Shown here in pieces: positions 7,531 to 27,898 of a stretch of 64,000 nt of DNA; the first letter of the stretch is position 1, and every line of letters begins with the position of its first letter. The stretch is from Octopus bimaculoides (taxonomy: Eukaryota). Where the stretch lies: the NCBI RefSeq assembly GCF_001194135.2, contig NC_068983.1, positions 68,676,950-68,740,949 on the forward strand, in the 5' to 3' direction. The notes under the pieces are model-generated. The model saw only the letters and a list, made by a program, of their open reading frames with translations. It did not search any database and was not told the origin of the DNA. Both the position numbers and the translations under genes were made by a program.

Positions 7531-7646
7531 ATGGCTGACATCCGACTCGCGAGTTCATCTGTTCGGACAAAAAACAAGTTTCAGCCTTCAGTAGAGAACT
7601 TGGTTACTCCAGGAGATGTTATTACATCAGACACATGTTTCATGAG
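7531..7646 (+). CDS. EXOSC2: EXOSC2/RRP4 exosome cap subunit, exon 1 (MADIRLASSSVRTKNKFQPSVENLVTPGDVITSDTCFM-R)
   Basis: ATG in strong context (caacATGG). LVTPGDVITSD..FMR matches the RRP4 N-terminus. Donor AG|GTAAGT, phase 2. Confidence 0.93.
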
Positions 7647-8439: not shown

Positions 8440-8763
8440 TGCTGTGCTTGAAGAGAACTATTGAGTCAAGTACATCAACATCAAAATGAAAATCAAATGG
8501 AAATTGTAGTTGTGATACCCGTGCTGGTGGCACGTAAAAAGCACCAACCGATCGTGGCCGTTGCCAGCCTCCTCTAGCCCCTGTGCCAGTGGAACGTAAA
8601 AAGCACCCACTACACTCACAAAGTGGTTAGCGTTAGGAAGGGCATCCAGCTGTAGAAACACTGCCAGATCAGACTAGAGCAACCTCCTGGCTTCCCAGAC
8701 CCCGGTTGAACCGTCCAACCCATGCTAGCATGGAAAACGGACGTTAAACGATGATGATGATGA
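8440..8763 (+). mobile_element. RTE 3'-end fragment
   Basis: GCATGGAAAACGGACGTTAAAC(GAT)n end. Confidence 0.85.
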
Positions 8764-9402
8764 CTTCTCAGTATGACTTAACTGTTAATGCCACAGAAAG
8801 CCATGAGTACTATCTGGTGGTGTTGTATACAAACGTGTCCTATAGAGCTACTTATTTTAGTTATAGAGCTATTTACTTAGTTTAATTAGTTTATTAAAGG
8901 CAGCTCTAAAATTATTTCTTCAAGATAGTTGAATACAATTCTGAAAAGCTCTTTCTTTTGCTAAACTAGATGAATAACAGAATGTGAATCGACTGGTTAG
9001 CATGTAAAAAAAGCAAGTTTGGTTTGTAAAGGTGGGAAACTGGCATGTCTTGTGTAATACAAGGTACATTGCTGAATGTACATCTGTGAGGTGTGAGATT
9101 TTCAAAGTTACCATTAATGTAGACGACAGGCTATAGTGTTATTTAGTATAAAACTGAAACTGTTTAAAAACATCAGACACATATACAAATGGTATAACAA
9201 TACAAATTGATCTCAAGAAATGGAAAATGAAGTCAGTTAAGGAAGGAAGGTTAGAAACTTTGGGCAAAACAGGGTTCAGAGTGAGAGAACCCATGGGTGA
9301 GAAGGGATAGTGGGGATGAAAGGCAGCTGTTGATAAGAAAACTAAATAAGGTAAAAAGACATTATTTACTATGGATGGATAGGTGTCCTCACCTTTGTTG
9401 TT

Positions 9403-9448
9403 ATCACAATGTTTTGGCTGATGTACTCCCCAGCCTCCATTAGGTTTT
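9403..9448 (-). ncRNA. Decayed hammerhead motif, inverted partner copy
   Basis: Minus strand reads AAAAC-CTAATGG-A-GGCTG-(10 nt)-CAGCC-AAAAC-ATT-GTGAT. Stem II is intact and the core is mutated. Confidence 0.55.
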
Positions 9449-9735
9449 TTGGTGGAATTTTGAACCCAACCCTTTATTTGACTAATGGGGTATTCTTTTT
9501 TACTGATGTTATTTTTTTTTGTTGATATTATTTCCCAAGTCCCAGTCTGGGATTGAACTCAGAATCCGAGGGTACATAACATAGTGGATAAGAGTGCGGG
9601 CTACTGACACTCGGATTCTGAGGCAGGGACTTGGGAAATAATACCAAAAAAAAAAAAAGAAAACAGAATACCTTAGGAATGAGAACAGGGCACTCCCATT
9701 AGTCAAATAAAGGGTTGGGTTCGAAATTCCACCAG

Positions 9736-9776
9736 AACACCTGATGAAGGCTGGAGAGTACATCAGCCGAAACATA
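9736..9776 (+). ncRNA. Minimal type-I hammerhead ribozyme motif (core intact, 3' strand of stem I deleted)
   Basis: AACAC-CTGATGA-A-GGCTG-(10 nt)-CAGCC-GAAAC-AT. Confidence 0.7.
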
Positions 9777-10368
9777 ACAACAAATAAGGTGAGGACACCT
9801 ATCTGTCCATTGTAAATAATGTACATAATTCCTCTTCTCAAAAATATAGAATGGTGAGGAAAACAGAATTAGATGTTTATATTTTATTACTGACCAATGC
9901 ACAAATAAGATAGAGGAATTGTAACTAAGAATTGCAAACTTCAGACCACAAAGTACTCATATTACTGTAGAACACAAGATATAATTGAATAAAGTTGAAT
10001 TTTGTATTAACAAAGCAATAAACACCTTCCACGCTGCAAACTATAAAGTCTTTTTAAAGAATATTGAAGAGAATAGTGAGAGGATTACTGTTTTATGTAA
10101 ATAGTATGTTAATAGCATTAGGTGAATCTGAACATGGGTTTTGAAGAAAGCTTATTTGTATGAAGGTTGTCCTGAAAGTAATGTATAAGTGGGAATAACT
10201 TTTTTTCATATATATGAATGATATACATAAGGCTTCTCAGCCTGTTAGTGTCCAATTTGAGTTGAAAAATCTCATGGAATTATGGCTCCTGTTGAATGAG
10301 ATTTTAAATCTTTATATATTAATGAGATGATTTATGAAAGACCATTATTTTTTCGTTTTGTTTCATAG

Positions 10369-10470
10369 AGGACATGGCACCTACACAGCGGATGACCGAC
10401 TTCATGCTTCAGTGGCTGGTGTTGTAGAGAGAGTGAATAAGTTGATCTGTGTACGTCCTTTGAAAACGAG
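10369..10470 (+). CDS. EXOSC2: EXOSC2 exon 2 (GHGTYTADDRLHASVAGVVERVNKLICVRPLKT-R)
   Basis: Acceptor tttcatAG, 102 nt, donor GTAAAG. Conserved RRP4 motif GHGTY...ASVAG.VERVNKLI. Confidence 0.96.
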
Positions 10471-12139
10471 GTAAAGTATAATTTTTTTCAAATAGCCCCA
10501 GAAATTCATAGGGCTGGTAAGTTTCTGTGTTATTGAATAGAGGTGGATGGGATTGTTAGAGTTATGTCCCTTATGTCATTAATTGCCGTGTTTATGATTT
10601 CTAACAATTAGTGTGTTAACATTTTCGAGGAAGACGTGTAATCTCAGCTTCATGACTAGTGTCAGTTGATCCCAAATTGTGACTGGTATGCATTTTCATC
10701 GACCCAGGAAGAGGAAAATCAATGTCAACTACCGTGAAATTTTGAACATAGTATATAAAGGAACGTAACTATATAGCGTAAGGCATTTGAAAGGTTTGCA
10801 CTACTTTTCTGTCATTCTGCCATTCTTATAAATGAAATGGAAACATAATTTTTGCAGTAGAGTCTGTATTAATGAAATTTGTTAATTGGTGATAGATTGA
10901 CAGTAATGATATTTACAATGTATAATTGAAAAAAAATTTTAAAAGAAAATTTCTTTAGGCAAAGCTAACATTCTTTAGTTTAATTTTCGAATGAAGCAAG
11001 ACCTCTCATAGGCAGGGATAAATTTCTTTTGAGGATTTTAACTCTGGAATTCTTAGGTTTATATAAATTTTAATATATTTATTTGTTGATGAGAATATAT
11101 TTTATTAGCATAAATTTTTCACTGTCACTTTTCTGTTTTTTTTTTTTTTACTCTTTTACTATGCATAAATCTCAATTATCTTTAAGTCTATTTTGCTTTC
11201 TTGCCAAATGAGAAAATAGCATAAATACTCTTTGTATTCTTTATGATACATGAAAAATAAAAAGTTTCTGGCTGTAGCAAAAAGGAAAAACAAACAACTT
11301 CAAAGAATGTAGCAATGAAGATTTTATGCTGCTAAAATGTATCTTAGCCTGTTCTCATCATCATCATCATCATATGTTTATTTTCCATGCTGGCAAGAGT
11401 TGGACGGTTTGGCAGGGCGCTTGTTAGGCAGGAAACTGCACCAGGTTTCACTGTTTTGGTTGGATTTTAATGGCTGGATGCTCTTCCTAACACCAACTAC
11501 CTTACAGAATGGGCAAGCTTTAGTTTTTCAAAGCTCACTGTGTTTATAATGAGAAATCAACTTGATTTGTTAGGATTGTTTGTCCCAAACTCTGTTTACG
11601 CATCTATTACAGAAAACTTTCTAGGAAGTTCTGCTACTTATTGCCCTACTATTAGGTATGTAGATTACAGCATCCTACCCAGATACCCAGTAATATGCCT
11701 GTACTAATATTCCAGTAATATGCCTGTAATTATATTGTTATCTAGTCCAGGAAGGCACAACGTTGTCTATATCTTTATTTGAGATTGATCAAATAAGTTT
11801 TTTAGTGTTTTGGTTACATATATTGGAATATTTGATGACAGGGTCTTAGCTTTTGATGTAGGTGTAGAAGCACCATTGCAACAAACACTTTAAATTGGAA
11901 ATTTCTTAAACCTGCCAGAGCCTACTCTTCTTCAAAGAAAAATAAAACAAAGAATTGATCCCGGTTTTGACCAGGTTACTTTATTTATTGACCTTGAAAG
12001 GATAAAAGGCAAAGTTGACCTTGGTGATATTTGAAGTCAATGCATAAAGAGCCAAAATAAATACCACAAAGCATTCTGTCTTCTGCTCTAATGACTCTGC
12101 CAATTTGCTGCTTTTTATTGTAATTACCCTAATTATAGA

Positions 12140-12556
12140 GGGAACATATGGCAGGGGTAGACCCAGGAAAATGTGGAACAAAATGGTGAGAAAGGATCTA
12201 CAGATGCTGGGGTTCACAAAGGAGATGACAGGGCACTGAGATTCCTGGTGGTTTGCTGTACTTGAAGAGACACATCAGGCTAAGTAAAAGTGTGGTTGTC
12301 CTTGCATACAGGCTTGTCCCCTGCATCCCTAATCTTGCGGGCTCATAGGTACTGGTGCCATGTTAATGCACCCATGCCAGTGCTGTGTAAAAGCACTCAG
12401 TACACACTCTAAAGTGGTTGGTGTTAGGACGGGCATCCAGCCATAGAAAGCATGCCAAAACAGACATTAAGCCTGGGCAGCTCTTCAGCTGGCCAGTTCC
12501 TGTCAAACTGTTTAACCCATGCCAGCATGGAAAACAGATGTTAAATATAATGATGA
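12140..12556 (+). mobile_element. RTE 3'-end fragment (older)
   Basis: GRGRPRK-like ORF end, 3' UTR and short tail. Confidence 0.8.
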
Positions 12557-12573
12557 CTTTACTACAATTAAGT

Positions 12574-12905
12574 ATCATCATCATCGTTTAACGTCCACTT
12601 TCCATGCTAACATGGGTTGGACGATTTGACTGAGGACTGGTGAAACCAGATGGCTACACCAGGCTCCAATCTGATTTGGCAGAGTTTCTACAGCTGGATG
12701 CCCTTCCTAACGCCAACCACTCTCAGAGTGTAGTGGGTGCTTTTACGTGCCACCGGCACGAAGGCCAGTCAGGCGGTACTGGCAACGGCCACATTCGAAA
12801 TGGTGTCTTTTACGTGCCACCCGCACAGGAGCCAGTCCAGTGGCACTGGCAACGATCTCGCTCGAATCTCTTTACACGTGCCACCGGCACAAGTGCCAGG
12901 GCACA
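12574..12905 (-). mobile_element. RTE 3'-end fragment (young subfamily)
   Basis: Near-identical in reverse to 28800-29103 and 46000-46358. Confidence 0.88.
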
Positions 12906-13075
12906 GGTCTTTTTTTAAGATAGTAGGATGGGATTTATGTGAAATTAATTTGCTGTTTTTAGCAAGCCAACTGCTTGTATAGAAGTTCCTCTAATGGTTT
13001 CATTGATACTCTATTGTTAATCTATGTTGTTAATAGTTAAAATTTCTCCATCTCACTGTTGTTGATGTTCTGTAG

Positions 13076-13211
13076 GTATAATGGTGAAGTTGGAGATGTT
13101 GTTGTTGGTCGAATCATTGAAGTAGGTCAACGGCGATGGAAAGTGGATACGCATTCCAAATTGGATTCTATTTTGATGCTGTCTTCTGTAAATTTACCTG
13201 GAGGAGAATTG
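13076..13211 (+). CDS. EXOSC2: EXOSC2 exon 3 (S1 domain: YNGEVGDVVVGRIIEVGQRRWKVDTHSKLDSILMLSSVNLPGGEL)
   Basis: Acceptor ttctgtAG, 136 nt, donor GTAAGG. RRP4 S1-domain sequence. Confidence 0.97.
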
Positions 13212-13320
13212 GTAAGGGACCTTTTTTTTCTAAGTTGTTGTGAAATGTTTATAGTAATTTCTAATTTAGACACAAGTCAAATTTTGAGCTATTGTATGGT
13301 CAGTTATTTCAACGGTGGTA

Positions 13321-13559
13321 TCTCATCATCATCATTTTAATGTCCACTTTTCCATGATTGCATGGGCCATACAAAATTTGCTGAGGCTGATTTTCTACAG
13401 TTGGATACCCTTCCAGTTGCCAACCCTCACTTGTTTCCAAACATGGTAATATTCCTCATCGCCAGACATCTTTTCATGGAAAATTGGAAAGAAAGGACAC
13501 TGCTTGCATGATGGTGACATTTATTTACAACTACCATGTGATGTCAAGGCAAGGAGACA

Positions 13560-13560
<1 letters not shown>
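13321..13560 (-). mobile_element. Non-coding element sharing the RTE 3' tail (family F)
   Basis: RTE-like terminus fused to a different body. Related copies at 23087-23300 and 34079-34315. Confidence 0.65.
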
Positions 13561-13595
<35 letters not shown>

Positions 13596-13597
<2 letters not shown>

Positions 13598-13790
13598 TGG
13601 AGTACTCTGCCTTAAAGGGTTTTAGTTGAACAAATCAACCCCATGACTTATTCTTTGTAAGCGTAATACTTATTCTATCTGCCCCTTTTGCCTAACTGCT
13701 AAGTCATGGGGATGTAAACACACCAACATCAGTTGTCAAGTTATGATGGGGGGGACAAATACAGACACAAAGACACACACCTATAAATAA

Positions 13791-13824
<34 letters not shown>

Positions 13825-13985
13825 GATGGGTTTCTTTCAGTTACCGTCTACCAAATCCACTCTCAAGGTTTTAGTTGGCCGAAGGCTATAGTAAAAGACA
13901 CTTGCCCTAGGTGCTATGCAGTGGGACTGAACCTTGTAACCATGTGGTTGGGAAGCAAGCTTCTTAGCATACAGCCATGCCTATA
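13596..13985 (-). mobile_element. SINE family A (tRNA head, central microsatellite, 3' module)
   Basis: Matches the copies at 17765-18172, 44420-45476 and 60930-61251. Confidence 0.8.
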
Positions 13986-14217
13986 AAATGTATATATGTG
14001 CTTGTGAGTATATTTGTATAATAACAAGTAAGGGGTGGAAACAAAGCCAGTCTGACATGCTTACTGTGAGATTGCTTTCTTTTGCCGAACAGAATAGCAG
14101 TTAAATTAGTGGTGATGATGATGGTTGTTGTTGTTGTTGTTAATGTCTTTCAAGAAGAGACCTGCAACATGATTAAGTTTTGATGGTTTTTAATTTTCAT
14201 TCCTTTTTTTCATGCAG

Positions 14218-14283
14218 AGACGAAGGTCAGAAGAAGATGAGAAGATGATGCGACATTACTTAAAAGAGAATGATCTCATCAGT
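14218..14283 (+). CDS. EXOSC2: EXOSC2 exon 4 (RRRSEEDEKMMRHYLKENDLIS)
   Basis: Acceptor catgcAG, 66 nt, RRRS.EDE..MR..L.E.DLIS motif. Followed by a U12-type donor. Confidence 0.95.
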
Positions 14284-14293
14284 GTATCCTTTC
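14284..14293 (+). promoter_or_regulatory. U12-type 5' splice site GTATCCTTTC
   Basis: Exact match to the minor-spliceosome RTATCCTTT consensus at the end of exon 4. Confidence 0.92.
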
Positions 14294-14429
14294 TTTCTTT
14301 GCTTTTCTTTTCTGGTTGTATCACAATTTCACTTTGTTGGTTTACTGATCTGTTGGCTTATTTCTTTGTTTATTTATTGGATTTTTTTGTATTGATTTGT
14401 TGTGTTATTTGTTCATTATTGTCATCATT

Positions 14430-14620
14430 TAGCCATAGGTCAGCCTTTATGAAACAGATCCATGATCAAAAGCATTCCTGTTGTGATGAGCCAATCTTTC
14501 TGCTCAGGTCAATATCTAATGTGTCCTTTTGTTTTTTTAAGAAGACAGGTGTAATTTGAGGGAGATGTAGTTGCTATTTCTTTAATATCAAGTGGCCATA
14601 CTGAGGCTCACTTGTTGGCT
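14430..14620 (+). repeat. Short interspersed repeat family G
   Basis: Motif GATCAAAAGCATTCC...GATTTGAGGGAGAT..GCTATTTCT recurs at about 19590-19770, 20400-20585, 20690-20955, and reversed near 41950, 51390 and 55070. Confidence 0.6.
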
Positions 14621-14734
14621 TGATTGGTTTGGCAGATTTCTTATAGTTCTTTAACCCAGGTCAGCCTAGCTTATGGTCAAAAGCATTACAACCATGACTA
14701 TCTCACCTTTTAATACATCTACCATTGTCCAATG

Positions 14735-14988
14735 TAAAGTAAAAGTTAAGTTTCCTTCTCGAGTCATGCTGACTCATAAGGGCTGGTTTCCATGACGTAT
14801 AAATTCCCCACCTGGATGGGACACTGGTCCATCACAGGATTACTCACTTTTGCCAGCTGAGTGAATTGAAGCAACATGAAATGAAGTGTTTTGCTCAAGA
14901 ACACAACACATCACTCAGTCCAGGAATCGAAACCACAATCTCATGATGATGAGTCCAACACCCTAACCACTAAGCTGTGTGCCTCCAC
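14735..14988 (-). mobile_element. tRNA-derived SINE (family B-related head)
   Basis: Reverse tRNA-like head GCTTAGTGGTTAGGG...GGTTTCGATTCC and a CACTCAGCTG core. Confidence 0.7.
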
Positions 14989-15639
14989 CATTGTACAATA
15001 TACATTATTTATACTCATATATGAGTTGCAGTGGTAGACAAGTCAGCCTCTATTCTCGTCTTATGTTTATAATTTGTTTTGGGTATGACCATGATTTTAA
15101 ACTGTAACTGGTAGTGGGGCCCTAGTTCAGGGTTTCAGGATTTTGAGGAGTGTGGAACCACCATTTAGCCACTATTGTTTCCTGGTCTACTCTGACCTGA
15201 AATGGTAGCACTTAACAGGGCCCCAGCTGTGGGTTAATTAGCATATTAGGGCTTCATTGTTTATGCATGTGAAGACTGGATTTGGTGGATTCTACAGAAG
15301 AAACCTTCATGGTTCAACAGAGGGAACTGTGGCTGCTGCAATACATCGTGGAGTGCAGAGAGCAAGATGATTTAAGTAAGACCTCTTGGTTATCATCCAC
15401 TGCGTCTGTCTCTGTCCCAAGTTATCTTGACCTGGTTTTGTTACTCGGTTGAAGATGGTCATGGCTGAGAGGGAGGCTGACAGTGCATGGCTCTTCTTCA
15501 TTTTAAACAAAATCACTGAGCAAGTCATCAGTAATCCATAAGGATGACTAGATATGTCTCATTGCTCCAGTGGATGGACACGATATGTTTATAATATTTT
15601 GTATTCAGCCTTTGACACATGTAACTTTTCATTTGTGGC

Positions 15640-15866
15640 TGCACCATGCACAAAGCACCTGTGTCAATGCTATGTAAAGGCACCTGTGCTGTCACCCAGT
15701 ATATTCTGTAAAGTGGTTGGCATTAGGAAGGGCAACCAGCCATAGAAACCATGCCAAAAAGACCCCCAGCCAACTAGAACCTGGTACTGTCCTCTGGCTT
15801 GCCAGCTCCTGACCATCCAACCCATGCCAGCATGGAAAATGGGTGTAAAATGATGATGATGATGAT
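15640..15866 (+). mobile_element. RTE 3'-end fragment
   Basis: Family 3' UTR and (GAT)n tail. Confidence 0.8.
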
Positions 15867-16734
15867 TAAAATAAACATATTTAGCTGCTATGAAGGTAGG
15901 TTGGTCATGGTGACATAAGTAAGCTGCCTTATATAGTCAATGTGCCACTGGTATGCTGGTATGTATGTTGATGCTTATTGATCCAAGCTCAGGGCAAGGA
16001 TTTGTAGATAAGTCATGGAAGTTTTTATTTTATTGTGTCTCTTTATTGAGGAAAAGACTGTAACTTCTTGAGAAATATAAGTAGTACTTCTCTATGAAAG
16101 GTGGTAAACTGTAGTTTCTGAAGGCATGTAGCCTAGTGGATAAATTATTGGGATCTCTATCATTAGGTCATGGGTTCTATTCTCAGGCAGGGCTGTGCTT
16201 TGTGTCCTTGAGTATAGTATTTCATTTCATGTTTCTCCAGGACACTTAGCTGAAAAAGAGGACCTTCTGGGGGTTGTTGTTGTTGTTGGTGGGTGGGTGT
16301 TTGGGTTAACTTTGCAATGGATTAGCATCTTGTTCAGGCAGGCATCTTGTACTTTCAGCCTAAATGCCTTGAAAATCCAGATAATTCTGACATTATGAGC
16401 CTGTTGGCTCAAAGCATACTCCCTACTCTCAAACAAGGACCCTATGATTTGAGGAAGATTGGGCTACTATTTCCAGTAAGTTGATTGACCATGTAGAGGC
16501 TTCAGGGAACGTTTGAAAATCATATGTGGCTCTTAACAATTAAAGAGTTAAAACATTTATGAAATAATTTGAATGAACTTTATTAAAACTACATTTATAA
16601 TATCTACAGTTAGGTTTTATGAGCCCATCATTACTACTGGATTCACTGGTGGAAAATGGTCACATTTCTGTTCATGAATCTCAAACACCATTCAGTTGAA
16701 ATATGAAACTTTTAATTACTTAATATATATATAT

Positions 16735-17415
16735 ACTTGAAGAGGTGTGTATGGGGGTGTGATTGTGCTGACAATGTTATATGGTGCAGAGACGTGGGGG
16801 CTGAAAGAGGTGGAAAGGAAGCGACTAGATGTGTTTGAGATGAGATGTTTGAGGGCTATGGTTGGTGTGACATGGATGGACAGGATGAGGAATGAGGAGG
16901 TGCGAAGGTGAGCCAAAATGAGAGAAAAACTAACAACCAAAATGGATAGACGAATGTTGAGGTGGTTTGGCCACATGGAGTGGATGGAGGAGAAGTGAGT
17001 GGTAAGGTGGGTGATGAAGGCAGAAGTGGTAGGCAACAGAACCAGAGGCAGACCTCAGTTTGTGTGGATGGATGGAGTGAGGAAAGGTTTGGTAGTTAGA
17101 GGTGTTGGAGTGAGAGAGGCAAGGGAATTTATAAATGATAGGAAAGCTTGGAGAGTGTTTGTGGATGGATGAAGGAATTTTGATGTTGCTCAAAGGGGTA
17201 TGGAACCAGCATGATGTGGCAGGGGTAAACCAGCATATGCTGTTGGGCCCCGCTGCTGATATTGGGGGTTGCATTCTATGCCTTGACCCGAGCATAGGAC
17301 GGGGCTCGCCTCTTTGAGCTGAGAAATGAATGGAATGCCTGGTGTGTGTCTTGTGGCTACCCACTCCTAAAAAAATGGGGGATAGGCCTGGGTATATGTA
17401 TGTATGTATGTATTC
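16735..17415 (+). mobile_element. RTE-clade LINE 3' fragment of a distinct lineage with (TATG)n tail
   Basis: MLYGAETWGLKEVERKRLDVFEMRCLR...LRWFGHME...RGRPQFVWMDGV; tail TATGTATGTATG. Confidence 0.8.
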
Positions 17416-17764
17416 ATGTGTAGTTCTAATGTTTTTGTCCATTCATTTGTAATTCATGTGTCCAAATAGATAAATCTTTCTCCAGTTACTTTTATGGACA
17501 GCAATTTAGCACATTTTAATTTATTTTGCAGTCTCAAGTGTCTCTTGTTTCTGTCCTTCACAAATTTTTCTGACACACAAAATGCTGTCTCAGCATTATG
17601 ATTTCCATGCCTTTCAACATATCATTAATATACAACTTAAAAACCAGCCTCATAACTTTAGTTTTTGGTATTCATGGTTTTGTTTTGTTCTTTTTTTTTT
17701 TTTGTCACATTTTTCTTTTAAAAGTTGAATGTATTTTTCATCACTTTTGTCAACAAATTTGTGC

Positions 17765-18172
17765 GTATCTTTTATCTTTTACTTATTTCAGTTTGCCTGC
17801 AGCTATGCTGGGGCACTGCTTTGAAGGGATTTTCTAGTCGAACAAATTGACCCCAGGACTTATTTTTTAAAGCCTAGTACTTATTCTATTGCTCTCTTTT
17901 GCCAAACCACTAAGTTATAGGGATGTAAACAAATCAATACCAGTTATCAAGCGGTGTTGAAGGGAAAAACACAGACACAAAGATAGATAGACAGACACAC
18001 ATATACGACAGGCTTCATTGAGTTTCCATCTCCCAGATCCAGTCACAAGGCTTTGGTTGGCCTGAGGCTATAGCAGAAGGCACTTGTCCAAGGTGCCATG
18101 CAGTGGGACTGAACCCGGAACCTTGTGGTTGGACAGCAAGCTTCTTACCACACAGCCATGCCTATGCCTATA
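17765..18172 (-). mobile_element. SINE family A
   Basis: Head on minus GGCATGGCTGTGTGGTAAG...GGGTTCAGTCCC; full 3' module. Confidence 0.82.
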
Positions 18173-21112
18173 AGGGCTAAAAGTTTATATGAAGCAACAT
18201 AGCATGCATTTCATCACACATTGACACATTTGTTCTGTAGCAAAATTAAGCTCAGTTAATGTAAGTCAGAGTTTGATTACAAATTGTGAATTTTAAATAT
18301 ATAATTGCCTTCCTATCACTTCCTGCTCATCCATGGAATAATGGTATCTGTTCTCATACAAGTTGTGTTCCTTGCTCTACTGACATAACAAAATTGCTTT
18401 AGTAGTAAATAACATTTGAACTGACAATATCCTGCTACTCTTCCTACTCTTAAATCTCTCAACTATGAAGTGGTGCTGGAACATGTTTGTCACCAATAAA
18501 GACTGGCAAATAGAGTTGAATGACTTGCTCAATGTTTTTAAACAATTATTGCACAGCTGGTTTTATGTTAAGTCATCTAGTATCTTGTTCTCTGTTACAC
18601 TCTAAACAGAAGAATTTCATGTTGAAAATGGAGTCCATGTTGCCAGATTTAAAGATAGCATATGTAATTGCTAAACAAGCGTTACTGAACTAGGTATCTC
18701 AAAGCATCTAGTTTGACCTTTTCCCATGCTTGTGTCAGCTCTTCAGCAACAATTTAACAAAGATTAATTTTATCTGTAGTTCAACATTGAGAAATAACCT
18801 ACTTTCCTTAGATTGTCATATTATTCAAAAGGCAAATCTTTCATCCACTTAAAATCTTTATATATTCCTTTAAATATCTTTTATTTCAGTCTGTCTCTAT
18901 ATCATCATCAATAGGTTGGGCTTTTGATAGTTGACAACTAAATGGATAGATGAGGTTGATTGACCATGTAGAGGCTTCAGGGAACGTTTGAGAATCATAT
19001 GTGGCTCTTAACAATTAAAGAGTTAAAACATTTATGAAATAATTTGAATGAACTTTATTAAAACTACATTTATAATATCTATAGTTGGGAAATAACCTAT
19101 AAGCTGTGTGCTTGTGAGCATGCACACATTTTTGTAAGAAAGGTAATAAATTTTCATGGTGCTCTAGCATGGCCACAGTCAAATGACTGAAACAAATAAA
19201 AGAATAAAAGAGTAAGATGAATTCAAATTTTTTTTAATTGGAAATATTTTAGTGATCATTACTTGCATGGATGTGTACCTACTTTGCAGAGAAAATTAAA
19301 ATTTGCACTCAGTGCATATTTCTGTGCATACCCCAGCAAAAAAATTATGCTCATGGCATAGGCACAGCTAAGTAAGGCATTGCTCATGTAAGCACATTGC
19401 TCATGGCATAGGCAAAGCTAATGCAGTTTGGGTGCTATACGCCCCCCCCCCCTCGCTCAGACAGTATTAAAATTTATTAAGGAAACATTATTAATGAAGT
19501 TACTCTAAAGTGTTGGCTTGTTAATTCGGCAATGTTTTGAAATATTACCTATGATGTTGTGTGACATACCTTTCAGAGTTGTTATTGTTTAGGTCCAAGT
19601 AAACCCTGCAGGACAAAGCTATGATCAAAGAATTCCAACCATGACCCTCCTGTATTTTTAGAGGTATCTAGGACTGCACTATCTAATGTGTCCTGTTTTT
19701 TTAAGAGTTAGGGTGTACTTTTAAGATTTAATCTGTTGTTTTTAGCTAGTTCAGCAACTATATTAAGGTCCTCTTTGGGCCCATCACAGTGGAACTATCA
19801 AGTAGGAGTTTCTTGAAAGTGAAGTTTAGGAACGGTGAATACAAATACAAAAAAAAGTGGTTTGGGGAATTATTGATGTTGATCTTTTACTCTGAATACC
19901 ATGTGGTACAGGTGCATACTGCACACTCTGCCATGCAACAGTTGATCAAGTAAGATGCAGCATGAGAGTCAAATCATGTTGCAGCTGTCCTTCATTGTTT
20001 AAGATGTTTTAAAGAAGATAAGGCTGCTATTTTCAGCAGGTTTAGCAATAACATAGAAGTTCCATGATTGGCAAAATTAAAAGAGAGAGTCAGGTAAAAT
20101 AAATGTTATATTTCCATTTCTTTAGTCTCTTAGCTTAAATCCTGTTGGGGCTGTTTTTCTGTTTGTATTTGGATGGGAGAAATAAGGCTTTTAAGAGTGT
20201 ATCCCAGATTTATTAGAGCTGATGGCTTTTATAATTGATTTATTGGTTTAGATGTGGTTTTGTAAACTAACTCTTTATTAAATCATTGACTCAGTAGCAA
20301 GGTCTATATTCTCTACTCTATTTGATTGAAACAAAAAGTACAGTTTACCTTGCCAAAATGTATACTGTAATATCTATTTGTTATTTTGTGGTTGTTTAGT
20401 TCCAGGTCACCCTGATCAAGCAGACTTACAATCAGAGACATTCTAATCATGCTCTTTCTGTCTTTTTATAGTATATCTAAGACTTCTACATTATTCAATA
20501 TGTTCCCACTTCTTTTTAAGATTGCTGAGGGAAATTTGGTTGCTATTTCTAGATGGTCAAAAACTCATGTAGAGGTTCTTACTTGTTCATCTGTCAGTTT
20601 GTGTTAAACCCTTGATCATTATGTCAATTATTCTAGCCATTGTTTCATGTTCTATGTAATTTCTTTAGTGTGTGTTGTTTATCTTTGGTCAGGGAGACCT
20701 GTTATCAAAAGCATTCTAACCATGACCAACCCATCTATTTTTTCAAGCAAAGTTTACTCTGGACTACATTAACTTATAGTTTTGCTGCATTTAAACTGGC
20801 CATACCTGGCCCAAATATTCTACATGTTTTGTATTCAAAACAATGTAAATAAATAAGCATTACAATCGACAGAATAATTTAAATGCTAAAGTGTTAAGGT
20901 GTGATTTGAGGGGAAATTTGTAGGAAGTCAAGTGGCTACATATAGGCCCTCTCCCACTTGTAACCTTGTTCACTCTGTGGTCTTAATCTTTGCTATCAAC
21001 TGGAAATATATGACTTTAATGCAAGAATTTTGTTAAGTGTAAATTGCAACTTCATGCTTCAGTTGATCTTGACCAAGTGTATAACTTGTTTCTCTGTCTG
21101 TCTGTTTGTTCC

Positions 21113-21129
21113 TCCTTAACTGGCCGAAG
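21113..21129 (+). promoter_or_regulatory. U12-type branch point TCCTTAAC and 3' splice site (GAAG)
   Basis: TCCTTAAC at 21113-21120 ends 9 nt before the intron end. There is no polypyrimidine tract between branch point and AG. Confidence 0.92.
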
Positions 21130-21198
21130 GCTGAAGTACATTCAGTGTTCTCTGATGGGTCCTTGTCTTTACATACTCGCAGTCTCAAGTATGGCAAG
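21130..21198 (+). CDS. EXOSC2: EXOSC2 exon 5 (AEVHSVFSDGSLSLHTRSLKYGK)
   Basis: 69 nt, conserved AEV..VFSDG..SLHTRSLKYGK, donor GTGAGT. Confidence 0.96.
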
Positions 21199-22176
21199 GT
21201 GAGTGAGATTTTTAAATGATCCATATTCCTATGTATATAACTGTCCTCTTTATTTACCCTGCTTTTCTCCCTTTTTTTCCTGTCTTTTTATTTTTTACTT
21301 GTTTCAGTCACCGGGTTGCTTTCATGTTGGGGCTCTGCCTTGAAGGGGTTTTAGTTGAACAAATTGAACCCAATACTTCGTGTTTTTGAAAGTCTGATAT
21401 TTATTCTGTCAGTCTCTTTTTCTGAACCGCTAAGTTACGAAGATATAAACAAACCAACACTGGTTATCAAGCAGTGGTGGCAGGCAAACACATGCACAGA
21501 GACACACACATACTATAGTCACCTCTATCCCATCTGTAACTATCCTCACATTCCCATGAAACTTGTGCTCTGTTCCCCTCTTGCCCTCTCACCCTGTACA
21601 ATCTGCTGTATCACTTCAACTATATNNNNNNNNNNNNNNNCACACACATACACTGTACCATAACCCTTTCGTTACCAACCTGGCTGAAACCAGCTCTGGC
21701 TCTGAGTACAAATGTCTTGTTTTCATAAGTTTTGAATTAAAATCTTCCACCAAACCTTAGTCACAATTTATGTTCCTAACACTAGCTGAATGATAACTAA
21801 GTTATTTTACTAAATTCTTTGTTATATCTAAATTAAAAGAAACACAGAGCATCTCAAAATAAATCCAGTAACAAAAGGGTTAAGGGTATGTCCTGACGTA
21901 TTCACAACCATCTATCTTCCCCTTTCCAGCTATTTGAAGGGATTTTGTCTTGCAAGTTACTTGGTGACCCCCACCACTGATGCTAGTGCCATGAAAAAAG
22001 CACCTGGAACACTCTGTAAGTGTTAAGTAGGGTATCCAACCTTAGAAACCATGTCAAAACAGACAATAGTGTTTGGCACAGTCCTCTGGTTTACCAGCTC
22101 GTTAGATTGTGCAACCCATGCTGGCATGGAAAACGGATGATGTATACATATACATACAAACATTATATATATGTAC

Positions 22177-22207
<31 letters not shown>

Positions 22208-23323
22208 TATNNNNNNNNNNNNNNNNNNNNNNNNNNNNNNNNNNNNNNNNNNNNNNNNNNNNNNNNNNNNNNNNNNNNNNNNNNNNNNNNNNNNNNNNNN
22301 NNNNNNNNNNNNNNNNNNNNNNNNNNNNNNNNNNNNNNNNNNNNNNNNNNNNNNNNNNNNNNNNNNNNNNNNNNNNNNNNNNNNNNNNNNNNNNNNNNNN
22401 NNNNNNNNNNNNNNNNNNACACACACACACACACACAACGTGCTTCTTTCAGTTTTTGTCTATCAAATCCACTCACAAGGCTTTGGTCGACCCAGGGCTC
22501 TGACATTTGACTAAGGTGCCATACATTGCAAGATCTGTGTAAACTTTCATTTCTTTAAGCTGTTCACTTTTGATGAAGAGCCTTTGTGCCTGAAATATAT
22601 AAAGGTTCACTTTACTTTCCCTTCTGCAGTGTAAGAAGCTCTCCATCTTCATTATTTGTTATTTTATTCCTGTATCACAATGCTTCAAGCAATCTGCCAC
22701 GTTCTTCGTTAAAAACTAATTTTAATTTGAAAATTGAAATTTTAGGGTCATAGAAAATGATGCATTTGAACAGTTAAGGGATTATCTCCCTTAGACTTGC
22801 TTTCGTTTCAAAACAAACCTCTTATCTCGTTTTGATGCATGTTCGCACGCGCGCGACACACACACACACAGTATACCCAGTAACAAGTACAGAGTTGATA
22901 GTCGTGATTTTAAGCCTTACTATTAAAGTCATTGTACAAGTCACAAATTCTATTTGCCTGACATTCATAAACAATTTCTCCTCTAATTTCGTATTTCAAT
23001 GGCATCCAGCAGATAATTCATCCCCCTCTCTCAAGGAAAGAAAATTATGGTAAATACTTGTGTTATATATATGTATAATATATCATTATCATCATCATCA
23101 TCATTTAGCACCCGCTTTTCCTTTCTTGCTTGGATCAGATGGAATTTGCTTAGGCAGGTTTTCTGTAGCCAGATGTCTTTCTTTTCACCAAACCATTCCT
23201 GTTTCCAAGCAAGACATGTTTTTCACAGAAGACTAGAAATGAACAACATTGCTTGTATGACAGTCATACTTTTACTAATCATCATATGATGTCAAGGTAC
23301 ATTTACATGCATATACACATCAG

Positions 23324-23355
<32 letters not shown>

Positions 23356-23442
23356 TTGTGTATAAGTTGCACTATTATACACTTGATTCTAACTCAAAAT
23401 ACTAGGGTGCAACATATATATTACTAAATATGGTACATATAT

Positions 23443-24420
23443 ATCATCATCATTTAACGTCTATTTTCCATGCTGGCATGGGTTGGATGGTTTAACTGAG
23501 GTCTAGAGAGCCTGCAGCTGCACCAAGCTCTAATCTGATCTGGCAATGTTTCTACTGCTGGATGCCCTTCCTAACGCCAACCACTCTGAGAGTGTAGTGG
23601 GTGCTTTTTACGTGCCACTGGCACTGGGGCCGGTCGGGGTGTGCTGGCATCAGCCACGTTCGGATGGTGCTTTTTACATGCGACTGGCATAGGAGCCATT
23701 CAGGCACTGGCCACAGCTACGATATTGGTTTTACTTGACTCAACAGGTCTTCTCAAGTATATCATATCGCATAACTCATCAGGGATACTCCGCGATCTCA
23801 CTTTAGTTGCTGGGTCTTCTCAATCACAGCATAACTCCAAAGGTCTTGGTCTCCTGTTATTGACTTTGTGAGGCCCAATGTTCGATGGTCATGCTTCACC
23901 ACCTCATCCCATGTCTTCCTGGATCTAACTCTTCCACACTTCCACAGGTTCCTTCCACAGTTAGGGAATGGCACTTTCTCACGCAGCTGTCCTCATTCAT
24001 ATGTAACACATGACCATAACAGCGCAGTCATCTCTCTTGCATACCACATTTGATGATTCTTATGCCCAACTTTCTCTTGCCTGCAATCTGTCGTGTATGC
24101 ACACTGACATTACACATCCAGCGGATCATACTAGCTTCATGTTTTTCAAGCCTAAGGATGTCCTCAGCAGTCATGGCCCATGTTTCACTGCCGTATAGCA
24201 TGGCTGTTCGCACACATGCATCATACAGTCTACCTTTCATCCTGAGCGAGAGGCCCTTAGTTGCCAGCAGATGTAGGAGGTCCCTAAGCTTTGCCCAGGC
24301 TATTCTTATTCTAGCCGCTACACTCTCAGAGCAGCCACACCCACTACAGACTTTGTCGCCTAGGTAGCGGAAGCTATTAACTACTTCTAGTTTCTACCCC
24401 TGGCACATGATGGAATCTGT
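23443..24420 (-). mobile_element. RTE LINE 3' fragment
   Basis: KGRLYDACVRTAMLYGSETW on the minus strand; (CAT)n tail at left. Confidence 0.88.
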
Positions 24421-24431
24421 TTTCTATATAT

Positions 24432-25394
24432 ATCATCATCATTTAACGTCCGCTTTCCATGCTAGCATAGGTTGGACGATTTGACTGAGGACTGGTNNNN
24501 NNNNNNNNNNNNNNNNNNNNNNNNNNNNNNNNNNNNNNNNNNNNNNNNNNNNNNNNNNNNNNNNNNNNNNNNNNNNNNNNNNNNNNNNNNNNNNNNNNNN
24601 NNNNNNNNNNNNNNNNNNNNNNNNNNNNNNNNNNNNNNNNNNNNNNNNNNNNNNNNNNNNNNNNNNNNNNNNNNNNNNNNNNNNNNNNNNNNNNNNNNNN
24701 NNNNNNNNNNNNNNNNNNNNNNNNNNNNNNNNNNNNNNNNNNNNNNNNNNNNNNNNNNNNNNNNNNNNNNNNNNNNNNNNNNNNNNNNNNNNNNNNNNNN
24801 NNNNNNNNNNNNNNNNNNNNNNNNNNNNNNNNNNNNNNNNNNNNNNNNNNNNNNNNNNNNNNNNNNNNNNNNNNNNNNNNNNNNNNNNNNNNNNNNNNNN
24901 NNNNNNNNNNNNNNNNNNNNNNNNNNNNNNNNNNNNNNNNNNNNNNNNNNNNNNNNNNNNNNNNNNNNNNNNNNNNNNNNNNNNNNNNNNNNNNNNNNNN
25001 NNNNNNNNNNNNNNNNNNNNNNNNNNNNNNNNNNNNNNNNNNNNNNNNNNNNNNNNNNNNNNNNNNNNNNNNNNNNNNNNNNNNNNNNNNNNNNNNNNNN
25101 NNNNNNNNNNNNNNNNNNNNNNNNNNNNNNNNNNNNNNNNNNNNNNNNNNNNNNNNNNNNNNNNNNNNNNNNNNNNNNNNNNNNNNNNNNNNNNNNNNNN
25201 NNNNNNNNNNNNNNNNNNNNNNNNNNNNNNNNNNNNNNNNNNNAGTTATCCTCATCCATTCTCACCACATGTCCATACCAGCGCAATCGTCTCTCTTGCA
25301 CACCACAACTGATGCTTCTAATGTTCAGCTTTTCTCTCAAGATACTTACACTCTGACGGGTATTCACATTGACATTACGCATCCAACGGAGCAT
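24432..25394 (-). mobile_element. Young RTE LINE 3' fragment, interior in N gap
   Basis: Tail end left of the gap. LRWMRNVNVNTRQSVSILREKL right of the gap. CpGs retained. Confidence 0.8.
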
Positions 25395-25429
25395 ATTCTT
25401 TTAGTTTATTCTTTTACATGTTTCAGTTA

Positions 25430-26075
25430 CATGTCACCAGCATCAGTCACAACTATAATTTCACTTGGCTTGACGGGTCTTCTCAAGCACAGCATATCGC
25501 CAAAGGTCCCAGTTGCTAGTCATTGCCTCTGTGAGGCTCAAAGTTCGAAGATCATGCTTCACCATCCTTTCCCATGTCCTCATGGGTCTACCTCTACTAC
25601 AGGTTCCCTCCACAGTTAGAGATTGGCACTTCTTTACACAGCTGTCCTCATCCATATGTATCACATGACCATGTCAACGCAATCGTCTCTTTTGCACACC
25701 ACATCTGATGCCTCTAATGCCTAATTTTTCTCTCAAGATGCTTACACTCTGTCGAACATGCACACTAACATTGCACATCCAGTGAAGCATACTGGCTTCA
25801 TTTCTTTCAAGCCTACGCATGTCCTCATCTGTCACAGAGCATGTTCCACTGCCATGTAGCATAGCTGTTTGCACACAGGCATCATACAATCTGCTTTTAT
25901 TCTGAGAGATAGGCCCTTTGTTGCCAGTAGAGGTAGGAGCTCTCTGAACTTTGACCATCTTAATCTTATTCTCACAGCTACACTCTCAGAGTATCCACCT
26001 CCACTACTAACTTGGTCACCTAGGTAACAAGCTATCTACTACCTCTCGCTTGCCCCCACTAGCAGTTGATGGAGT
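25430..26075 (-). mobile_element. RTE LINE fragment
   Basis: RLYDACVQTAMLHGS and CSRGRPMRTWERMVK on the minus strand. Confidence 0.85.
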
Positions 26076-26329
26076 CTATTTACTGCACATTTTATATATC
26101 ATATTTACTGCACATNNNNNNNNNNTATATCATATTTACTGCACATATATCATATTTACTTGTGTATAAGTCACATTATTATATGCTTGATTCTGACTGA
26201 AAATATTGGGATGCGACTGATATTCAAGTGTTTATAATCATCATCATTGGACAGTTTGACAGGATCTAGTGAGTGAGAGGACTGCATTGAATTCCAATGT
26301 CCTTCCTAGTACCAACTAGTTTGCAGTGT

Positions 26330-27310
26330 GTATTGGGTTCTTTATTCAAGACACTGATACTAGTGAGGTGGCCAAGTAACTTGCAAGACAGAAAAAGAAG
26401 AAGCCCTCTTGGCTGAGTAGGTTTGTAGTAGATGGGGAACTAGCTTTATGCCAGGTGTTGAGCTGCTACAATATGATAGAGGGACAGGCACAGGGGTTTT
26501 ACTATTGAAGAGATAAATGTCAACCTTGCATTGATTGGATTGAAGTAGGTGAGAGTAACTGGAAAGAAGATAACGATGTTGGTGATGAGGTATCAGTATA
26601 CTTTCAAGGTGAATATGAGAGAATATGAACTGAAGATCAGGAGGAGGGAGGAGAAATGTGAGGGGAGAGTGACAGATGATTAAAGCTGGGGGTTAGAGGT
26701 TAATGTAGTGATTGATGTGCAAGGGTGGAGTGTGATTGATGGGAAATATCAGTGTAGGGGTGAAAGTAACAGAAGTAGTTCAGGTAAGCGGAGGTGATAA
26801 GTGGCACCGCAGGTAGTTTGGAGAGCAGCAGCATAATGAAACCTGTAGATAGACTAGAAAATAGGGAGATGATGTGCTGAGTGGGAGAATGGTGAGAGAA
26901 GTGTACAAGAACAGATATGGAGGTTAGAGATACATAAGTGGTAGCTATAGTGAGTAGGGGTGTGGTAAAGATGGTGGTATTGGTCGGGGATGTTGGAAAC
27001 AGCTATGAAAGGGTGTTGAGAGTGATTGCAGATATAAGGGAGTGTTAAAAATGAGGATGAGGTGAGGAGTCACAGGAAGGAGTGATCAGTGGAAAATAAA
27101 GGATGATATTTAGAATGAGGGACGAATGTTTAAAGGAAGTGGTTCCAGGGACAGGGGGAGGTAACTGGTTGCACAAAGGGTAGGGAATATGTGCAGATTC
27201 TGCAGTCATGATTATAGCCGTAGGATAGTGACATTGTTGGAAGAGTGATGGAGGGATGGGTGTTAGGAAGAGCTTGACATGGGCAGATTGAGTGCAGGGA
27301 TAAAGTCTAG
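26330..27310. mobile_element. Purine-rich degenerate repeat, possibly a Penelope-like body
   Basis: Strongly G/A-skewed tract similar in composition to 44130-44410. No diagnostic peptide read. Confidence 0.3.
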
Positions 27311-27329
27311 TGAATGTATAGGCATAAAC

Positions 27330-27858: not shown

Positions 27859-27898
<40 letters not shown>

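What the first reader, a model, noticed from the sequence alone, without database searches (positions are those of the whole stretch)
14284..21129. 6.8-kb U12-type (minor spliceosome) GT-AG intron in EXOSC2
Seen: donor GTATCCTTTC, branch TCCTTAAC 9 nt from the intron end, and a GAAG acceptor without a pyrimidine tract. All other introns have U2-type donors. Established: these are the defining U12 signals. I recall EXOSC2 as a minor-intron gene in human (to verify), which would make the intron ancient. Inference: a rate-limiting step for exosome supply that has survived expansion by many TE insertions. Standard gene predictors may mis-model it.
Basis: partly seen in the sequence, partly recalled or inferred. 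Interest (0 to 1): 0.72.

Follow-up and report, generated by a model that had tools for sequence, protein, structure and literature searches.

The report
Conserved minor-spliceosome intron in octopus EXOSC2
The fourth intron of the octopus RNA-exosome gene EXOSC2/RRP4 is a genuine U12-type ("minor spliceosome") intron that sits at the same codon in nine animal phyla-level lineages including mammals, so it is real and very old but is an expected orthologue of a long-known human minor intron rather than a discovery.

Summary
The window is Octopus bimaculoides. My 8-exon model of EXOSC2/RRP4 (292 aa) is 100% identical to the NCBI protein. Intron 4 is 14284-21129 (6,846 nt, phase 0, DLIS^AEV). It has a perfect U12 donor GTATCCTTT, the branch box TCCTTAAC ending 9 nt from the intron end, and an AG acceptor. 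The other six introns are GTAAGT-like U2 types.

The motifs occur at chance frequency across the window. What is non-random is their position: roughly 2e-7 per intron.

Eight other animals have an intron at the same codon and phase: scallop, brachiopod, annelid, horseshoe crab, sea star, amphioxus, zebrafish and a cetacean. In each it is the only U12-like intron of the gene. Two eudicot plants have an intron at the same position, but it is U2-type.

Human and mouse EXOSC2 have been listed as minor-intron genes since 2007, and minor-spliceosome knockouts cause retention of the human intron.

Three side claims fare less well:
- The public annotation already models the junction correctly.
- The 6.8-kb length is not special. 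The other octopus introns are 1-12 kb and the cetacean orthologue is 6.1 kb.
- TE content is real but modest.

The "rate-limiting" role is untested in octopus. Verdict: real, ordinary, already known in kind.

The parts
7531..41177 (+). EXOSC2/RRP4 coding region. Eight coding exons: 7531-7646, 10369-10470, 13076-13211, 14218-14283, 21130-21198, 33496-33675, 39248-39376, 41097-41177. The CDS is 879 nt and encodes 292 aa.
   Evidence: Exact spliced model. The product is 100% identical over 100% of its length to NCBI 'exosome complex component RRP4 [Octopus bimaculoides]'. Pfam domains ECR1_N, RRP4_S1 and KH_6.
14218..14283 (+). Exon 4 (66 nt, RRRSEEDEKMMRHYLKENDLIS). It ends in the Ser codon AGT, so position -1 is T.
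   Evidence: The AGT codon is invariant in 9 of 9 animals while neighbouring synonymous sites vary.
14284..21129 (+). Intron 4: U12-type GT-AG intron, 6,846 nt, phase 0, between codons 140 and 141 (DLIS^AEVH), inside the S1 domain.
14284..14292 (+). U12-type 5' splice-site box GTATCCTTT. It matches the U12 consensus at 9 of 9 positions and the U2 consensus (AG|GTRAGT) at 3 of 8.
   Evidence: It is the only plus-strand GTATCCTT in the 64 kb. Positions +1 to +5 are invariant and +6 and +7 are 8 of 9 across nine animals.
21112..21120 (+). U12 branch-point box CTCCTTAAC (core TCCTTAAC at 21113-21120). The presumed branch A is at 21119, or 21118.
   Evidence: The branch A lies 10 nt from the 3' end. 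The equivalent box lies 10-13 nt from the 3' end in all nine animals.
21128..21129 (+). 3' splice-site AG, preceded by TGGCCGA with no pyrimidine tract between the branch box and the AG.
   Evidence: There is no other in-frame AG within 60 nt upstream.
21130..21198 (+). Exon 5 (69 nt, AEVHSVFSDGSLSLHTRSLKYGK), followed by a U2-type GTGAGT donor.
14557..14559 (+). First in-frame stop (TGA) if intron 4 is retained. The product would be 140 native plus 91 unrelated residues, without the end of S1 or the KH domain.
15692..15870 (.). High-copy interspersed repeat fragment inside intron 4, with more than 15 partial copies elsewhere in the window at 76-92% identity.
   Evidence: No tRNA or Rfam match.
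17766..18165 (.). Two adjacent interspersed-repeat fragments inside intron 4, with about 9 copies elsewhere in the window at 75-90% identity.
14854..14988 (.). Interspersed-repeat fragment inside intron 4, with copies at 2178-2312 and 36780-36832.
19157..19223 (.). Short interspersed-repeat fragment inside intron 4, with 5 copies elsewhere in the window.

Best explanation
Intron 4 of the Octopus bimaculoides EXOSC2/RRP4 gene is a U12-type GT-AG intron removed by the minor spliceosome.

Proposed mechanism (inferred from established knowledge of U12 splicing, not shown here):
- The U11/U12 di-snRNP recognises the donor GTATCCTTT through U11, later replaced by U6atac.
- U12 snRNA pairs with the branch box TCCTTAAC 10 nt upstream of the AG.
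- The short branch-to-AG distance substitutes for a polypyrimidine tract.

The intron is the orthologue of the known human and mouse EXOSC2 minor intron and has kept its class since at least the bilaterian ancestor. The flanking 66- and 69-nt exons are bounded on their outer sides by ordinary U2-type sites.

Failure to splice the intron would run into a stop codon 91 codons in, giving a non-functional product or a decay substrate. This means EXOSC2 output depends on minor-spliceosome activity.

Shown here: the signals, their exact placement, the reading frame, and conservation of position, phase and class. Inferred: actual use of the minor spliceosome in octopus, and any regulatory (rate-limiting) consequence.
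For: 1. Sequence. The donor matches the U12 consensus at 9 of 9 positions and the U2 consensus at 3 of 8, with -1 T and no G at +5. The branch box matches at 8 of 9, with the branch A 10 nt from the 3' end.
2. Placement. This is the only plus-strand GTATCCTT among 3,598 GTs, and it sits exactly at the codon boundary the protein requires. The joint chance is about 2e-7.
3. Frame. Splicing 14283->21130 reproduces the annotated 292-aa RRP4 exactly. cDNA-sized contigs from two other cephalopods (P0002, P0003; 950-1,302 nt for 295 aa) encode an uninterrupted ...DLISAEV....
4. Orthology. An intron lies at the same codon and phase in Pecten, Lingula, Capitella, Limulus, Acanthaster, Branchiostoma, Danio and a cetacean. 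Each has a GTATC(C/T) donor (7-9 of 9) and a (T/C)CTT(A/G/C)A box 10-13 nt from the AG, and each is the only such intron in its gene. Conservation falls to background beyond +8.
5. Literature. Human EXOSC2 is a U12-intron gene (PMC1874599). The intron is retained after ZCRB1 or DDX59 knockout (PMC12095793). Molluscs are relatively rich in minor introns, and Octopus sinensis was analysed as a minor-intron-bearing species (PMC10639083).
6. The -1 U seen in all nine animals fits the reported -1 U excess of U12 GT-AG introns (PMC7367187).
Against: No octopus RNA data were available, so neither junction use nor dependence on the minor spliceosome was observed directly.

The window holds no minor snRNA genes, and the rest of the genome could not be searched. 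No formal intronIC score was computed, only consensus match counts.

A T/C-rich stretch lies just upstream of the branch box. This means some U2-type use of the acceptor cannot be formally excluded, and some U12-consensus sites are reported to be spliced by both systems (PMC10853781 abstract).

Phase 0 is the under-represented phase for U12 introns, though this does not argue against class.
Confidence: 0.93

Rival explanations
1. It is a U2-type (major spliceosome) intron with a weak GTATCC donor, and the resemblance to U12 signals is coincidental.
For: The termini are GT-AG. A T/C-rich run lies upstream of the branch box. The 8-mers occur at chance frequency window-wide. Plants have a U2-type intron at the same position.
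Against: The donor matches the U2 consensus at only 3 of 8 positions, with T at -1 and C at +5. The joint positional chance is about 2e-7. Both boxes are conserved at the orthologous intron in 9 of 9 animals while the flanking intron sequence is not. The human orthologue responds to minor-spliceosome knockouts.
Confidence: 0.02
2. It is a dual-competence intron. It is mainly U12-type but can also be spliced, or have its acceptor used, by the major spliceosome, giving alternative products around exons 4 and 5.
For: Some U12-consensus sites are reported to be used by both spliceosomes (PMC10853781 abstract). Alternative splicing around minor introns rises when the minor spliceosome is impaired (bioRxiv 2020.05.18.101246, abstract). 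Exons 4 and 5 are both multiples of 3 (66 and 69 nt), so skipping them would stay in frame. A T/C-rich tract lies upstream of the branch box.
Against: There is no GTRAG cryptic donor within about 100 nt of the U12 donor and no alternative in-frame AG upstream of the acceptor. No isoform lacking exon 4 or 5 was seen among the cephalopod proteins; the only isoform seen skips exon 6. Exons 4 and 5 encode the conserved end of the S1 domain.
Confidence: 0.04
3. The gene model is wrong here, and the true exon boundaries or the transcript differ. The locus could, for example, be an assembly artefact or a pseudogene.
For: The window has 14 runs of N, which are assembly gaps. No RNA evidence was examined directly.
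Against: Intron 4 contains no N. The ORF is intact, and its exon boundaries coincide codon for codon with eight other animals. The protein equals the NCBI model.
Confidence: 0.01

Closest known systems
Human and mouse EXOSC2 (RRP4) minor intron
   Same: Same gene. The intron lies at the same codon boundary (DLIS^AEV) and phase 0 in a mammalian orthologue 97% identical to my human probe. It has the same GT-AG U12 subtype, the agt|GTATCCT donor, and a TTCCTT-type branch box 12 nt from the AG. The length is similar (6,092 nt against 6,846 nt). Human EXOSC2 is catalogued as a U12-intron gene and is retained on ZCRB1 or DDX59 loss.
   Different: The species differs, and the intron interior is unrelated, carrying octopus-specific repeats. 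The branch box is canonical in octopus (TCCTTAAC) and degenerate in the mammal (TCCTTCAT). Human genomic DNA itself was not examined here. The equivalence rests on the cetacean locus plus the literature.
U12-type GT-AG introns in general (minor spliceosome: U11, U12, U4atac, U6atac, U5)
   Same: |GTATCCTT donor, TCCTTAAC branch box 10-13 nt from the 3' end, no pyrimidine tract after the branch site, U at -1, a single U12 intron among U2 introns in the gene, and deep conservation.
   Different: It is phase 0, the phase reported as under-represented among U12 introns (PMC7367187). Nothing else is atypical.
U2-type intron at the homologous position of plant RRP4 (Ricinus, Macadamia)
   Same: Same codon boundary (DVVC^AEVR) and phase 0. 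Five further intron positions are shared between the plant and animal genes.
   Different: The plant intron is U2-type: tgt|GTAAGT..., a pyrimidine tract, and no TCCTTAAC box. The class therefore differs between kingdoms. That is compatible with a U12-to-U2 conversion in the plant lineage or a U2-type ancestral state.
Minor introns of other exosome subunits (EXOSC1, EXOSC5) and of ZCCHC8
   Same: They belong to the same complex or pathway and are reported to be co-retained with EXOSC2 when minor splicing is impaired.
   Different: They are different genes, are not in this window, and were not examined in octopus.

Membership tests
U12-type (minor-spliceosome) GT-AG intron | 5' splice site matching |RTATCCTT(T) | tested here: met
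   GTATCCTTT at 14284-14292 matches at 9 of 9 positions.
U12-type (minor-spliceosome) GT-AG intron | Branch-point box TCCTTAAC-like, with the branch A about 10-15 nt from the 3' splice site | tested here: met
   TCCTTAAC at 21113-21120. The A at 21119 is 10 nt from the last intron base.
U12-type (minor-spliceosome) GT-AG intron | No polypyrimidine tract between the branch site and the 3' AG | tested here: met
   The intervening sequence is TGGCCGAAG. Caveat: a T/C-rich run lies upstream of the branch box.
U12-type (minor-spliceosome) GT-AG intron | Poor fit to the U2-type donor (AG|GTRAGT) | tested here: met
   It matches at 3 of 8 positions, with -1 T, +4 T and +5 C. The six other introns score 6-8 of 8.
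U12-type (minor-spliceosome) GT-AG intron | Class conserved at the orthologous position in other lineages that have a minor spliceosome | tested here: met
   9 of 9 animals share the codon, the phase and the U12-like donor and branch box. Two eudicots have a U2-type intron there.
U12-type (minor-spliceosome) GT-AG intron | Formal classifier score (intronIC or SpliceRack PWMs) above the U12 threshold | not tested
   intronIC and its PWMs were not available. Only consensus match counts were computed.
U12-type (minor-spliceosome) GT-AG intron | The host genome encodes U11, U12, U4atac and U6atac and the minor-specific proteins | not testable with these tools
   The window has no Rfam hit, and the rest of the octopus genome could not be searched. 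Indirect support: Octopus sinensis is treated as a minor-intron species and molluscs as minor-intron-rich in PMC10639083, whose criterion for presence requires at least 2 minor snRNAs.
U12-type (minor-spliceosome) GT-AG intron | Excision actually depends on the minor spliceosome | not testable with these tools
   This needs RNA and perturbation experiments. It has been shown only for the human orthologue.
EXOSC2 / RRP4 exosome cap subunit | ECR1_N + RRP4-type S1 + KH domain architecture and orthology to RRP4 | tested here: met
   Pfam PF14382, PF21266 and PF15985 all score above their cut-offs. The protein is 100% identical to NCBI O. bimaculoides RRP4 and 65-86% identical to metazoan RRP4s.
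Orthologue of the human EXOSC2 minor intron | Same codon position and phase as the mammalian U12 intron | tested here: met
   In cetacean locus L008, intron 5 lies at DLIS^AEVQ, phase 0, with agt|GTATCCTG...TTCCTTCAT 12 nt from the AG. It is the only U12-like intron of the gene. The human locus itself was not fetched.

The most novel reading that the evidence does not exclude
The U12 class of this intron, not just its position, has been kept for more than half a billion years. That is despite phase-0 U12 introns being the ones thought easiest to convert to U2-type, and despite a plant counterpart that is U2-type.

The reason could be a conserved homeostatic loop. The nuclear exosome degrades unspliced U12-intron transcripts (PMC4066798), and several of its own subunits (EXOSC1, EXOSC2, EXOSC5) carry U12 introns. 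Under this model, low exosome activity would spare unspliced EXOSC2 pre-mRNA and restore supply. The invariant AGT codon at -3 to -1 in nine animals would be part of that constraint.
Probability: 0.15. Interest if true: 0.5.

Novelty: already known. Interest (0 to 1): 0.15.

Why it matters
The result is mainly confirmatory. It shows that a reader without tools can spot a minor intron from sequence alone. It also documents, junction by junction, that the EXOSC2 minor intron is shared by molluscs, brachiopods, annelids, chelicerates, echinoderms, cephalochordates, fish and mammals.

Two practical uses follow. First, the intron is a ready marker for minor-spliceosome activity in cephalopods, read out as the intron-retention level of EXOSC2. 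Second, the animal (U12) versus plant (U2) difference at one shared intron position is a clean case for studying class conversion.

It does not change what is known about minor introns or about the exosome.

Tried and rejected
1. Motif enrichment as evidence. GTATCCTT and TCCTTAAC each occur 3 times on both strands against about 2 expected, so counts alone say nothing. I replaced this with a positional test.
2. Minor snRNA genes in the window: none (Rfam gathering scan).
3. A small RNA or tRNA-derived element hosted in intron 4: none (Rfam E<=1; ARAGORN).
4. TE coding remnants in intron 4. The two ORFs of at least 100 aa have no Pfam hit. Recognisable transposase and RT fragments lie in introns 5 and 6 instead.
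5. My first spliced aligner, based on tblastn HSPs, lost exons whose HSPs ran into introns. I replaced it with an exact-block aligner.
6. Octopus sinensis (P0010) and Latimeria (P0111) loci were not on record, so there was no second octopod genomic comparison.
7. A possible U12-type intron at the neighbouring position in Ricinus (GTATCTTG...CCTTCAC) is not conserved in Macadamia (GTAAGA). I rejected it as probable chance.
8. Supplementary data of PMC10639083 held here contain nothing on Octopus or EXOSC2.
9. Representative-library hits included nematodes, chytrids and Entomophthora.
10. The flanks of the gene (1-7.5 kb and 41.2-64 kb) showed only TE debris and low-complexity ORFs. I recognised no second host gene.


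Full report
**What is in the sequence.**
- Exon 4 ends ...GATCTCATCAGT at 14283.
- The intron begins GTATCCTTTC at 14284.
- TCCTTAAC occupies 21113-21120.
- The intron ends ...CTGGCCGAAG at 21129.
- Exon 5 begins GCTGAAGTA at 21130.

I used a human EXOSC2 sequence recalled from memory only as a tblastn probe, and it located eight coding exons on the + strand between 7531 and 41177. I refined them by hand and then with an exact spliced aligner. The exons are 7531-7646, 10369-10470, 13076-13211, 14218-14283, 21130-21198, 33496-33675, 39248-39376 and 41097-41177. Together they give an 879-nt ORF of 292 codons.

That protein is 100% identical over its full length to NCBI's 'exosome complex component RRP4 [Octopus bimaculoides]'. 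It has the ECR1_N, RRP4-S1 and KH_6 domains. So the window is octopus, the gene is EXOSC2/RRP4, and the public annotation already uses the 14283->21130 junction.

**Is it more than chance?** Counting motifs is uninformative. GTATCCTT and TCCTTAAC each occur three times on the two strands, against about two expected from dinucleotide shuffles. The signal is positional.
- Of 3,598 GT dinucleotides on the + strand, only one is followed by ATCCTT. It is the one at the single nucleotide where the reading frame requires a donor.
- Of 3,522 AGs, only three have TCCTTAAC with its branch adenosine 8-21 nt upstream.
- The joint chance is about 2e-7 per intron.

I scored all seven introns uniformly.
- Intron 4 matches the U12 donor consensus at 9 of 9 positions and the U2 donor consensus at 3 of 8. 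Its branch box matches at 8 of 9, with the A 10 nt from the 3' end.
- The other six introns match the U2 donor at 6-8 of 8 and the U12 donor at 2-5 of 9.

There is, however, a T/C-rich run just upstream of the box.

**Orthologous introns.** I fetched genomic loci for RRP4 from eight more animals: Pecten maximus, Lingula anatina, Capitella teleta, Limulus polyphemus, Acanthaster planci, Branchiostoma belcheri, Danio rerio, and a cetacean whose protein is 97% identical to my human probe. I recovered every intron by exact spliced alignment.

All nine animals, including octopus, have a phase-0 intron at the same codon boundary (D[LP]IS^AEV[QH]). In each it is the only intron with all three of these features:
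- a GTATC(C/T) donor, matching the U12 consensus at 7-9 of 9;
- the lowest U2 donor match in the gene (3-4 of 8);
- a (T/C)CTT(A/G/C)A box whose branch A lies 10-13 nt from the 3' end.

Column by column, positions +1 to +5 are invariant and +6 and +7 are 8 of 9. Beyond +8 conservation falls to background. The last exon codon is AGT (Ser) in all nine, although the neighbouring Asp and Ile codons vary at their third positions. This matches the reported excess of U at -1 of U12 GT-AG introns (PMC7367187).

The intron length is 106-1,961 nt in the seven non-mammalian species examined (six invertebrates and zebrafish), 6,092 nt in the cetacean and 6,846 nt in octopus.

**Plants.** I identified a real plant RRP4 among unnamed representatives and fetched loci from Ricinus communis and Macadamia integrifolia. 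All six introns of the plant genes lie at positions and phases shared with animal RRP4, including the homologous DVVC^AEVR site.

There, however, the intron is plainly U2-type in both plants: tgt|GTAAGT..., a pyrimidine tract, and no branch box. So the intron position appears to predate the plant-animal split. With these data the U12 class can be traced only to the bilaterian ancestor.

A U12-like look of the neighbouring Ricinus intron (GTATCTTG...CCTTCAC) is absent in Macadamia and is probably chance.

**Literature.**
- EXOSC2 appears in a 2007 list of human U12-intron genes (PMC1874599).
- It is listed among mouse and human minor-intron genes (bioRxiv 2020.05.18.101246).
- Its U12 intron, with those of EXOSC1, EXOSC5 and ZCCHC8, is strongly retained after knockout of DDX59 or the minor-spliceosome protein ZCRB1 (PMC12095793).
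- A survey of more than 3,000 genomes with intronIC treats Octopus sinensis as a minor-intron-bearing species and describes molluscs as relatively rich in minor introns. It also reports that minor and major intron lengths scale together across species (PMC10639083).
- In human cells U12 introns are on average two-fold more retained than their neighbours, and unspliced transcripts are exosome targets (PMC4066798).

**How it most likely works.** This step is inferred from established knowledge of U12 splicing.
- The U11/U12 di-snRNP binds the donor box and the branch box co-operatively.
- The short branch-to-AG distance replaces the pyrimidine tract.
- U4atac/U6atac.U5 completes catalysis.

The flanking 66- and 69-nt exons are bounded on their outer sides by ordinary U2 sites. 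If the intron is retained, translation hits TGA at 14557-14559 after 91 extra codons. The product would lose the end of the S1 domain and the entire KH domain, so retention amounts to loss of function.

There are no GTRAG cryptic donors near the U12 donor and no alternative in-frame acceptor upstream of 21129. Whether this step limits exosome supply in octopus is untested.

1. 'May be mis-modelled': not so for the NCBI annotation.
2. 'Expansion by many TE insertions': partly supported.
   - Intron 4 holds at least four interspersed-repeat fragments: 14854-14988, 15692-15870 (more than 15 other copies in the window), 17766-18165 and 19157-19223.
   - Only about 15% of it matches repeats elsewhere in the window, against 54%, 28% and 71% for introns 3, 5 and 6.
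   - It holds no TE coding remnant, tRNA or Rfam match.
   - All introns of this gene are long (1.0-12.3 kb), so the expansion is general rather than specific to the minor intron.
3. 'Ancient': supported for Bilateria.

**Verdict.** The intron is real, correctly delimited and correctly classified. It is the expected orthologue of a long-known minor intron in a gene already annotated with this junction, so its novelty is low.

The only mildly interesting points are the U12 (animals) versus U2 (plants) class difference at one shared position, and the invariant AGT at -3 to -1. The most novel reading not excluded is a conserved exosome/minor-spliceosome feedback loop that selects for keeping the U12 class. 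I give that about 15%.

**Limits.**
- No octopus RNA data were available.
- No formal intronIC score was computed.
- I could not search the octopus genome for minor snRNAs.
- There was no second octopod genomic locus; P0010 was not on record.
- Human genomic DNA itself was not examined.

Noticed in passing
L009 2942-3056 (Ricinus) and L010 6177-8331 (Macadamia): All six introns of the plant RRP4 genes lie at positions and phases shared with animal RRP4. The intron homologous to the octopus U12 intron (DVVC^AEVR, phase 0) is U2-type (GTAAGT plus a pyrimidine tract) in both eudicots. The same position therefore holds a different class in the two kingdoms.
   Followed up: yes
L009 1796-2875 (Ricinus intron 4, GIQ^RRRT): This intron has a U12-like donor GTATCTTG and a CCTTCAC box about 15 nt from the AG, at the position next to the animal U12 intron. 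The Macadamia orthologue is an ordinary GTAAGA intron, so the resemblance is probably chance.
   Followed up: yes
window 14281-14283 and the homologous codon in L001-L008: The Ser codon immediately before the U12 donor is AGT in all nine animals, although Ser has six codons and the adjacent Asp and Ile codons vary synonymously. This suggests selection on the -1 to -3 exon nucleotides of the minor 5' splice site.
   Followed up: partly
L008 5816-11907 (cetacean EXOSC2 intron 5): The mammalian orthologue of the minor intron is 6,092 nt, by far the longest intron of that gene and close to the octopus length. Its branch box is degenerate (TTCCTTCAT).
   Followed up: partly
window 33496-33675 (exon 6); protein P0010: The NCBI 'isoform X2' of Octopus sinensis RRP4 (232 aa) lacks exactly the 60 residues of exon 6 (LSQ...NLS). 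This is an in-frame exon-6 skip that removes most of the KH domain, and it is unrelated to the minor intron.
   Followed up: partly
window 30888-31316 (-), intron 5: A mariner/Tc1-type transposase fragment (Pfam Transposase_1, E = 6e-11; '...HPPYSPDIAPSDYHLF...'). A second, more degraded mariner-like ORF lies at 57192-57581 (+).
   Followed up: partly
window 37089-37535 (+), intron 6; also 24031-24393 (-), 24462-25394 (-), 34821-35309 (-) and 44640-45290 (+): A reverse-transcriptase fragment (Pfam RVT_1, E = 4e-13) plus several ORFs that look like LINE C-terminal tails ('...LYGSETWA.TAEDI...MLRWM.NVNVNTRQSVS...'). These non-LTR retrotransposon remnants lie in introns 5 and 6 and downstream of the gene.
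   Followed up: partly
window 15692-15870 and more than 15 other sites (e.g. 12394-12465, 33813-33880, 23443-23603): An interspersed element of about 180 bp ('...GGCATTAGGAAGGGCA.CCAGCC.TAGAAAC...CATGCCAGCATGGAAA...') is scattered on both strands through the introns and flanks. It looks SINE-like, but ARAGORN and Rfam recognised no tRNA-like head.
   Followed up: partly
window 7173-7357, 22211-22418, 24497-25243, 36041-36429, 44769-45285, 46359-46625, 59141-60117, 61252-61967 and six shorter runs: There are fourteen runs of N (assembly gaps), usually flanked by TA/CA or ATC-type microsatellites. They account for the apparent GC dips at 24-26 kb and 58-62 kb. None lies in intron 4 or in an exon.
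   Followed up: no
L004 4094-4615 (Branchiostoma belcheri): The amphioxus model contains an extra 342-nt 'intron' (VMVQ^VSPS) between two blocks that encode overlapping residues (163-177 and 168-222). This looks like a local duplication or an annotation artefact rather than a conserved intron.
   Followed up: no
window 4494-4501 (-) and 63028-63035 (-): The two other GTATCCTT matches are on the minus strand, outside any recognised gene, and occur at the frequency expected by chance.
   Followed up: no
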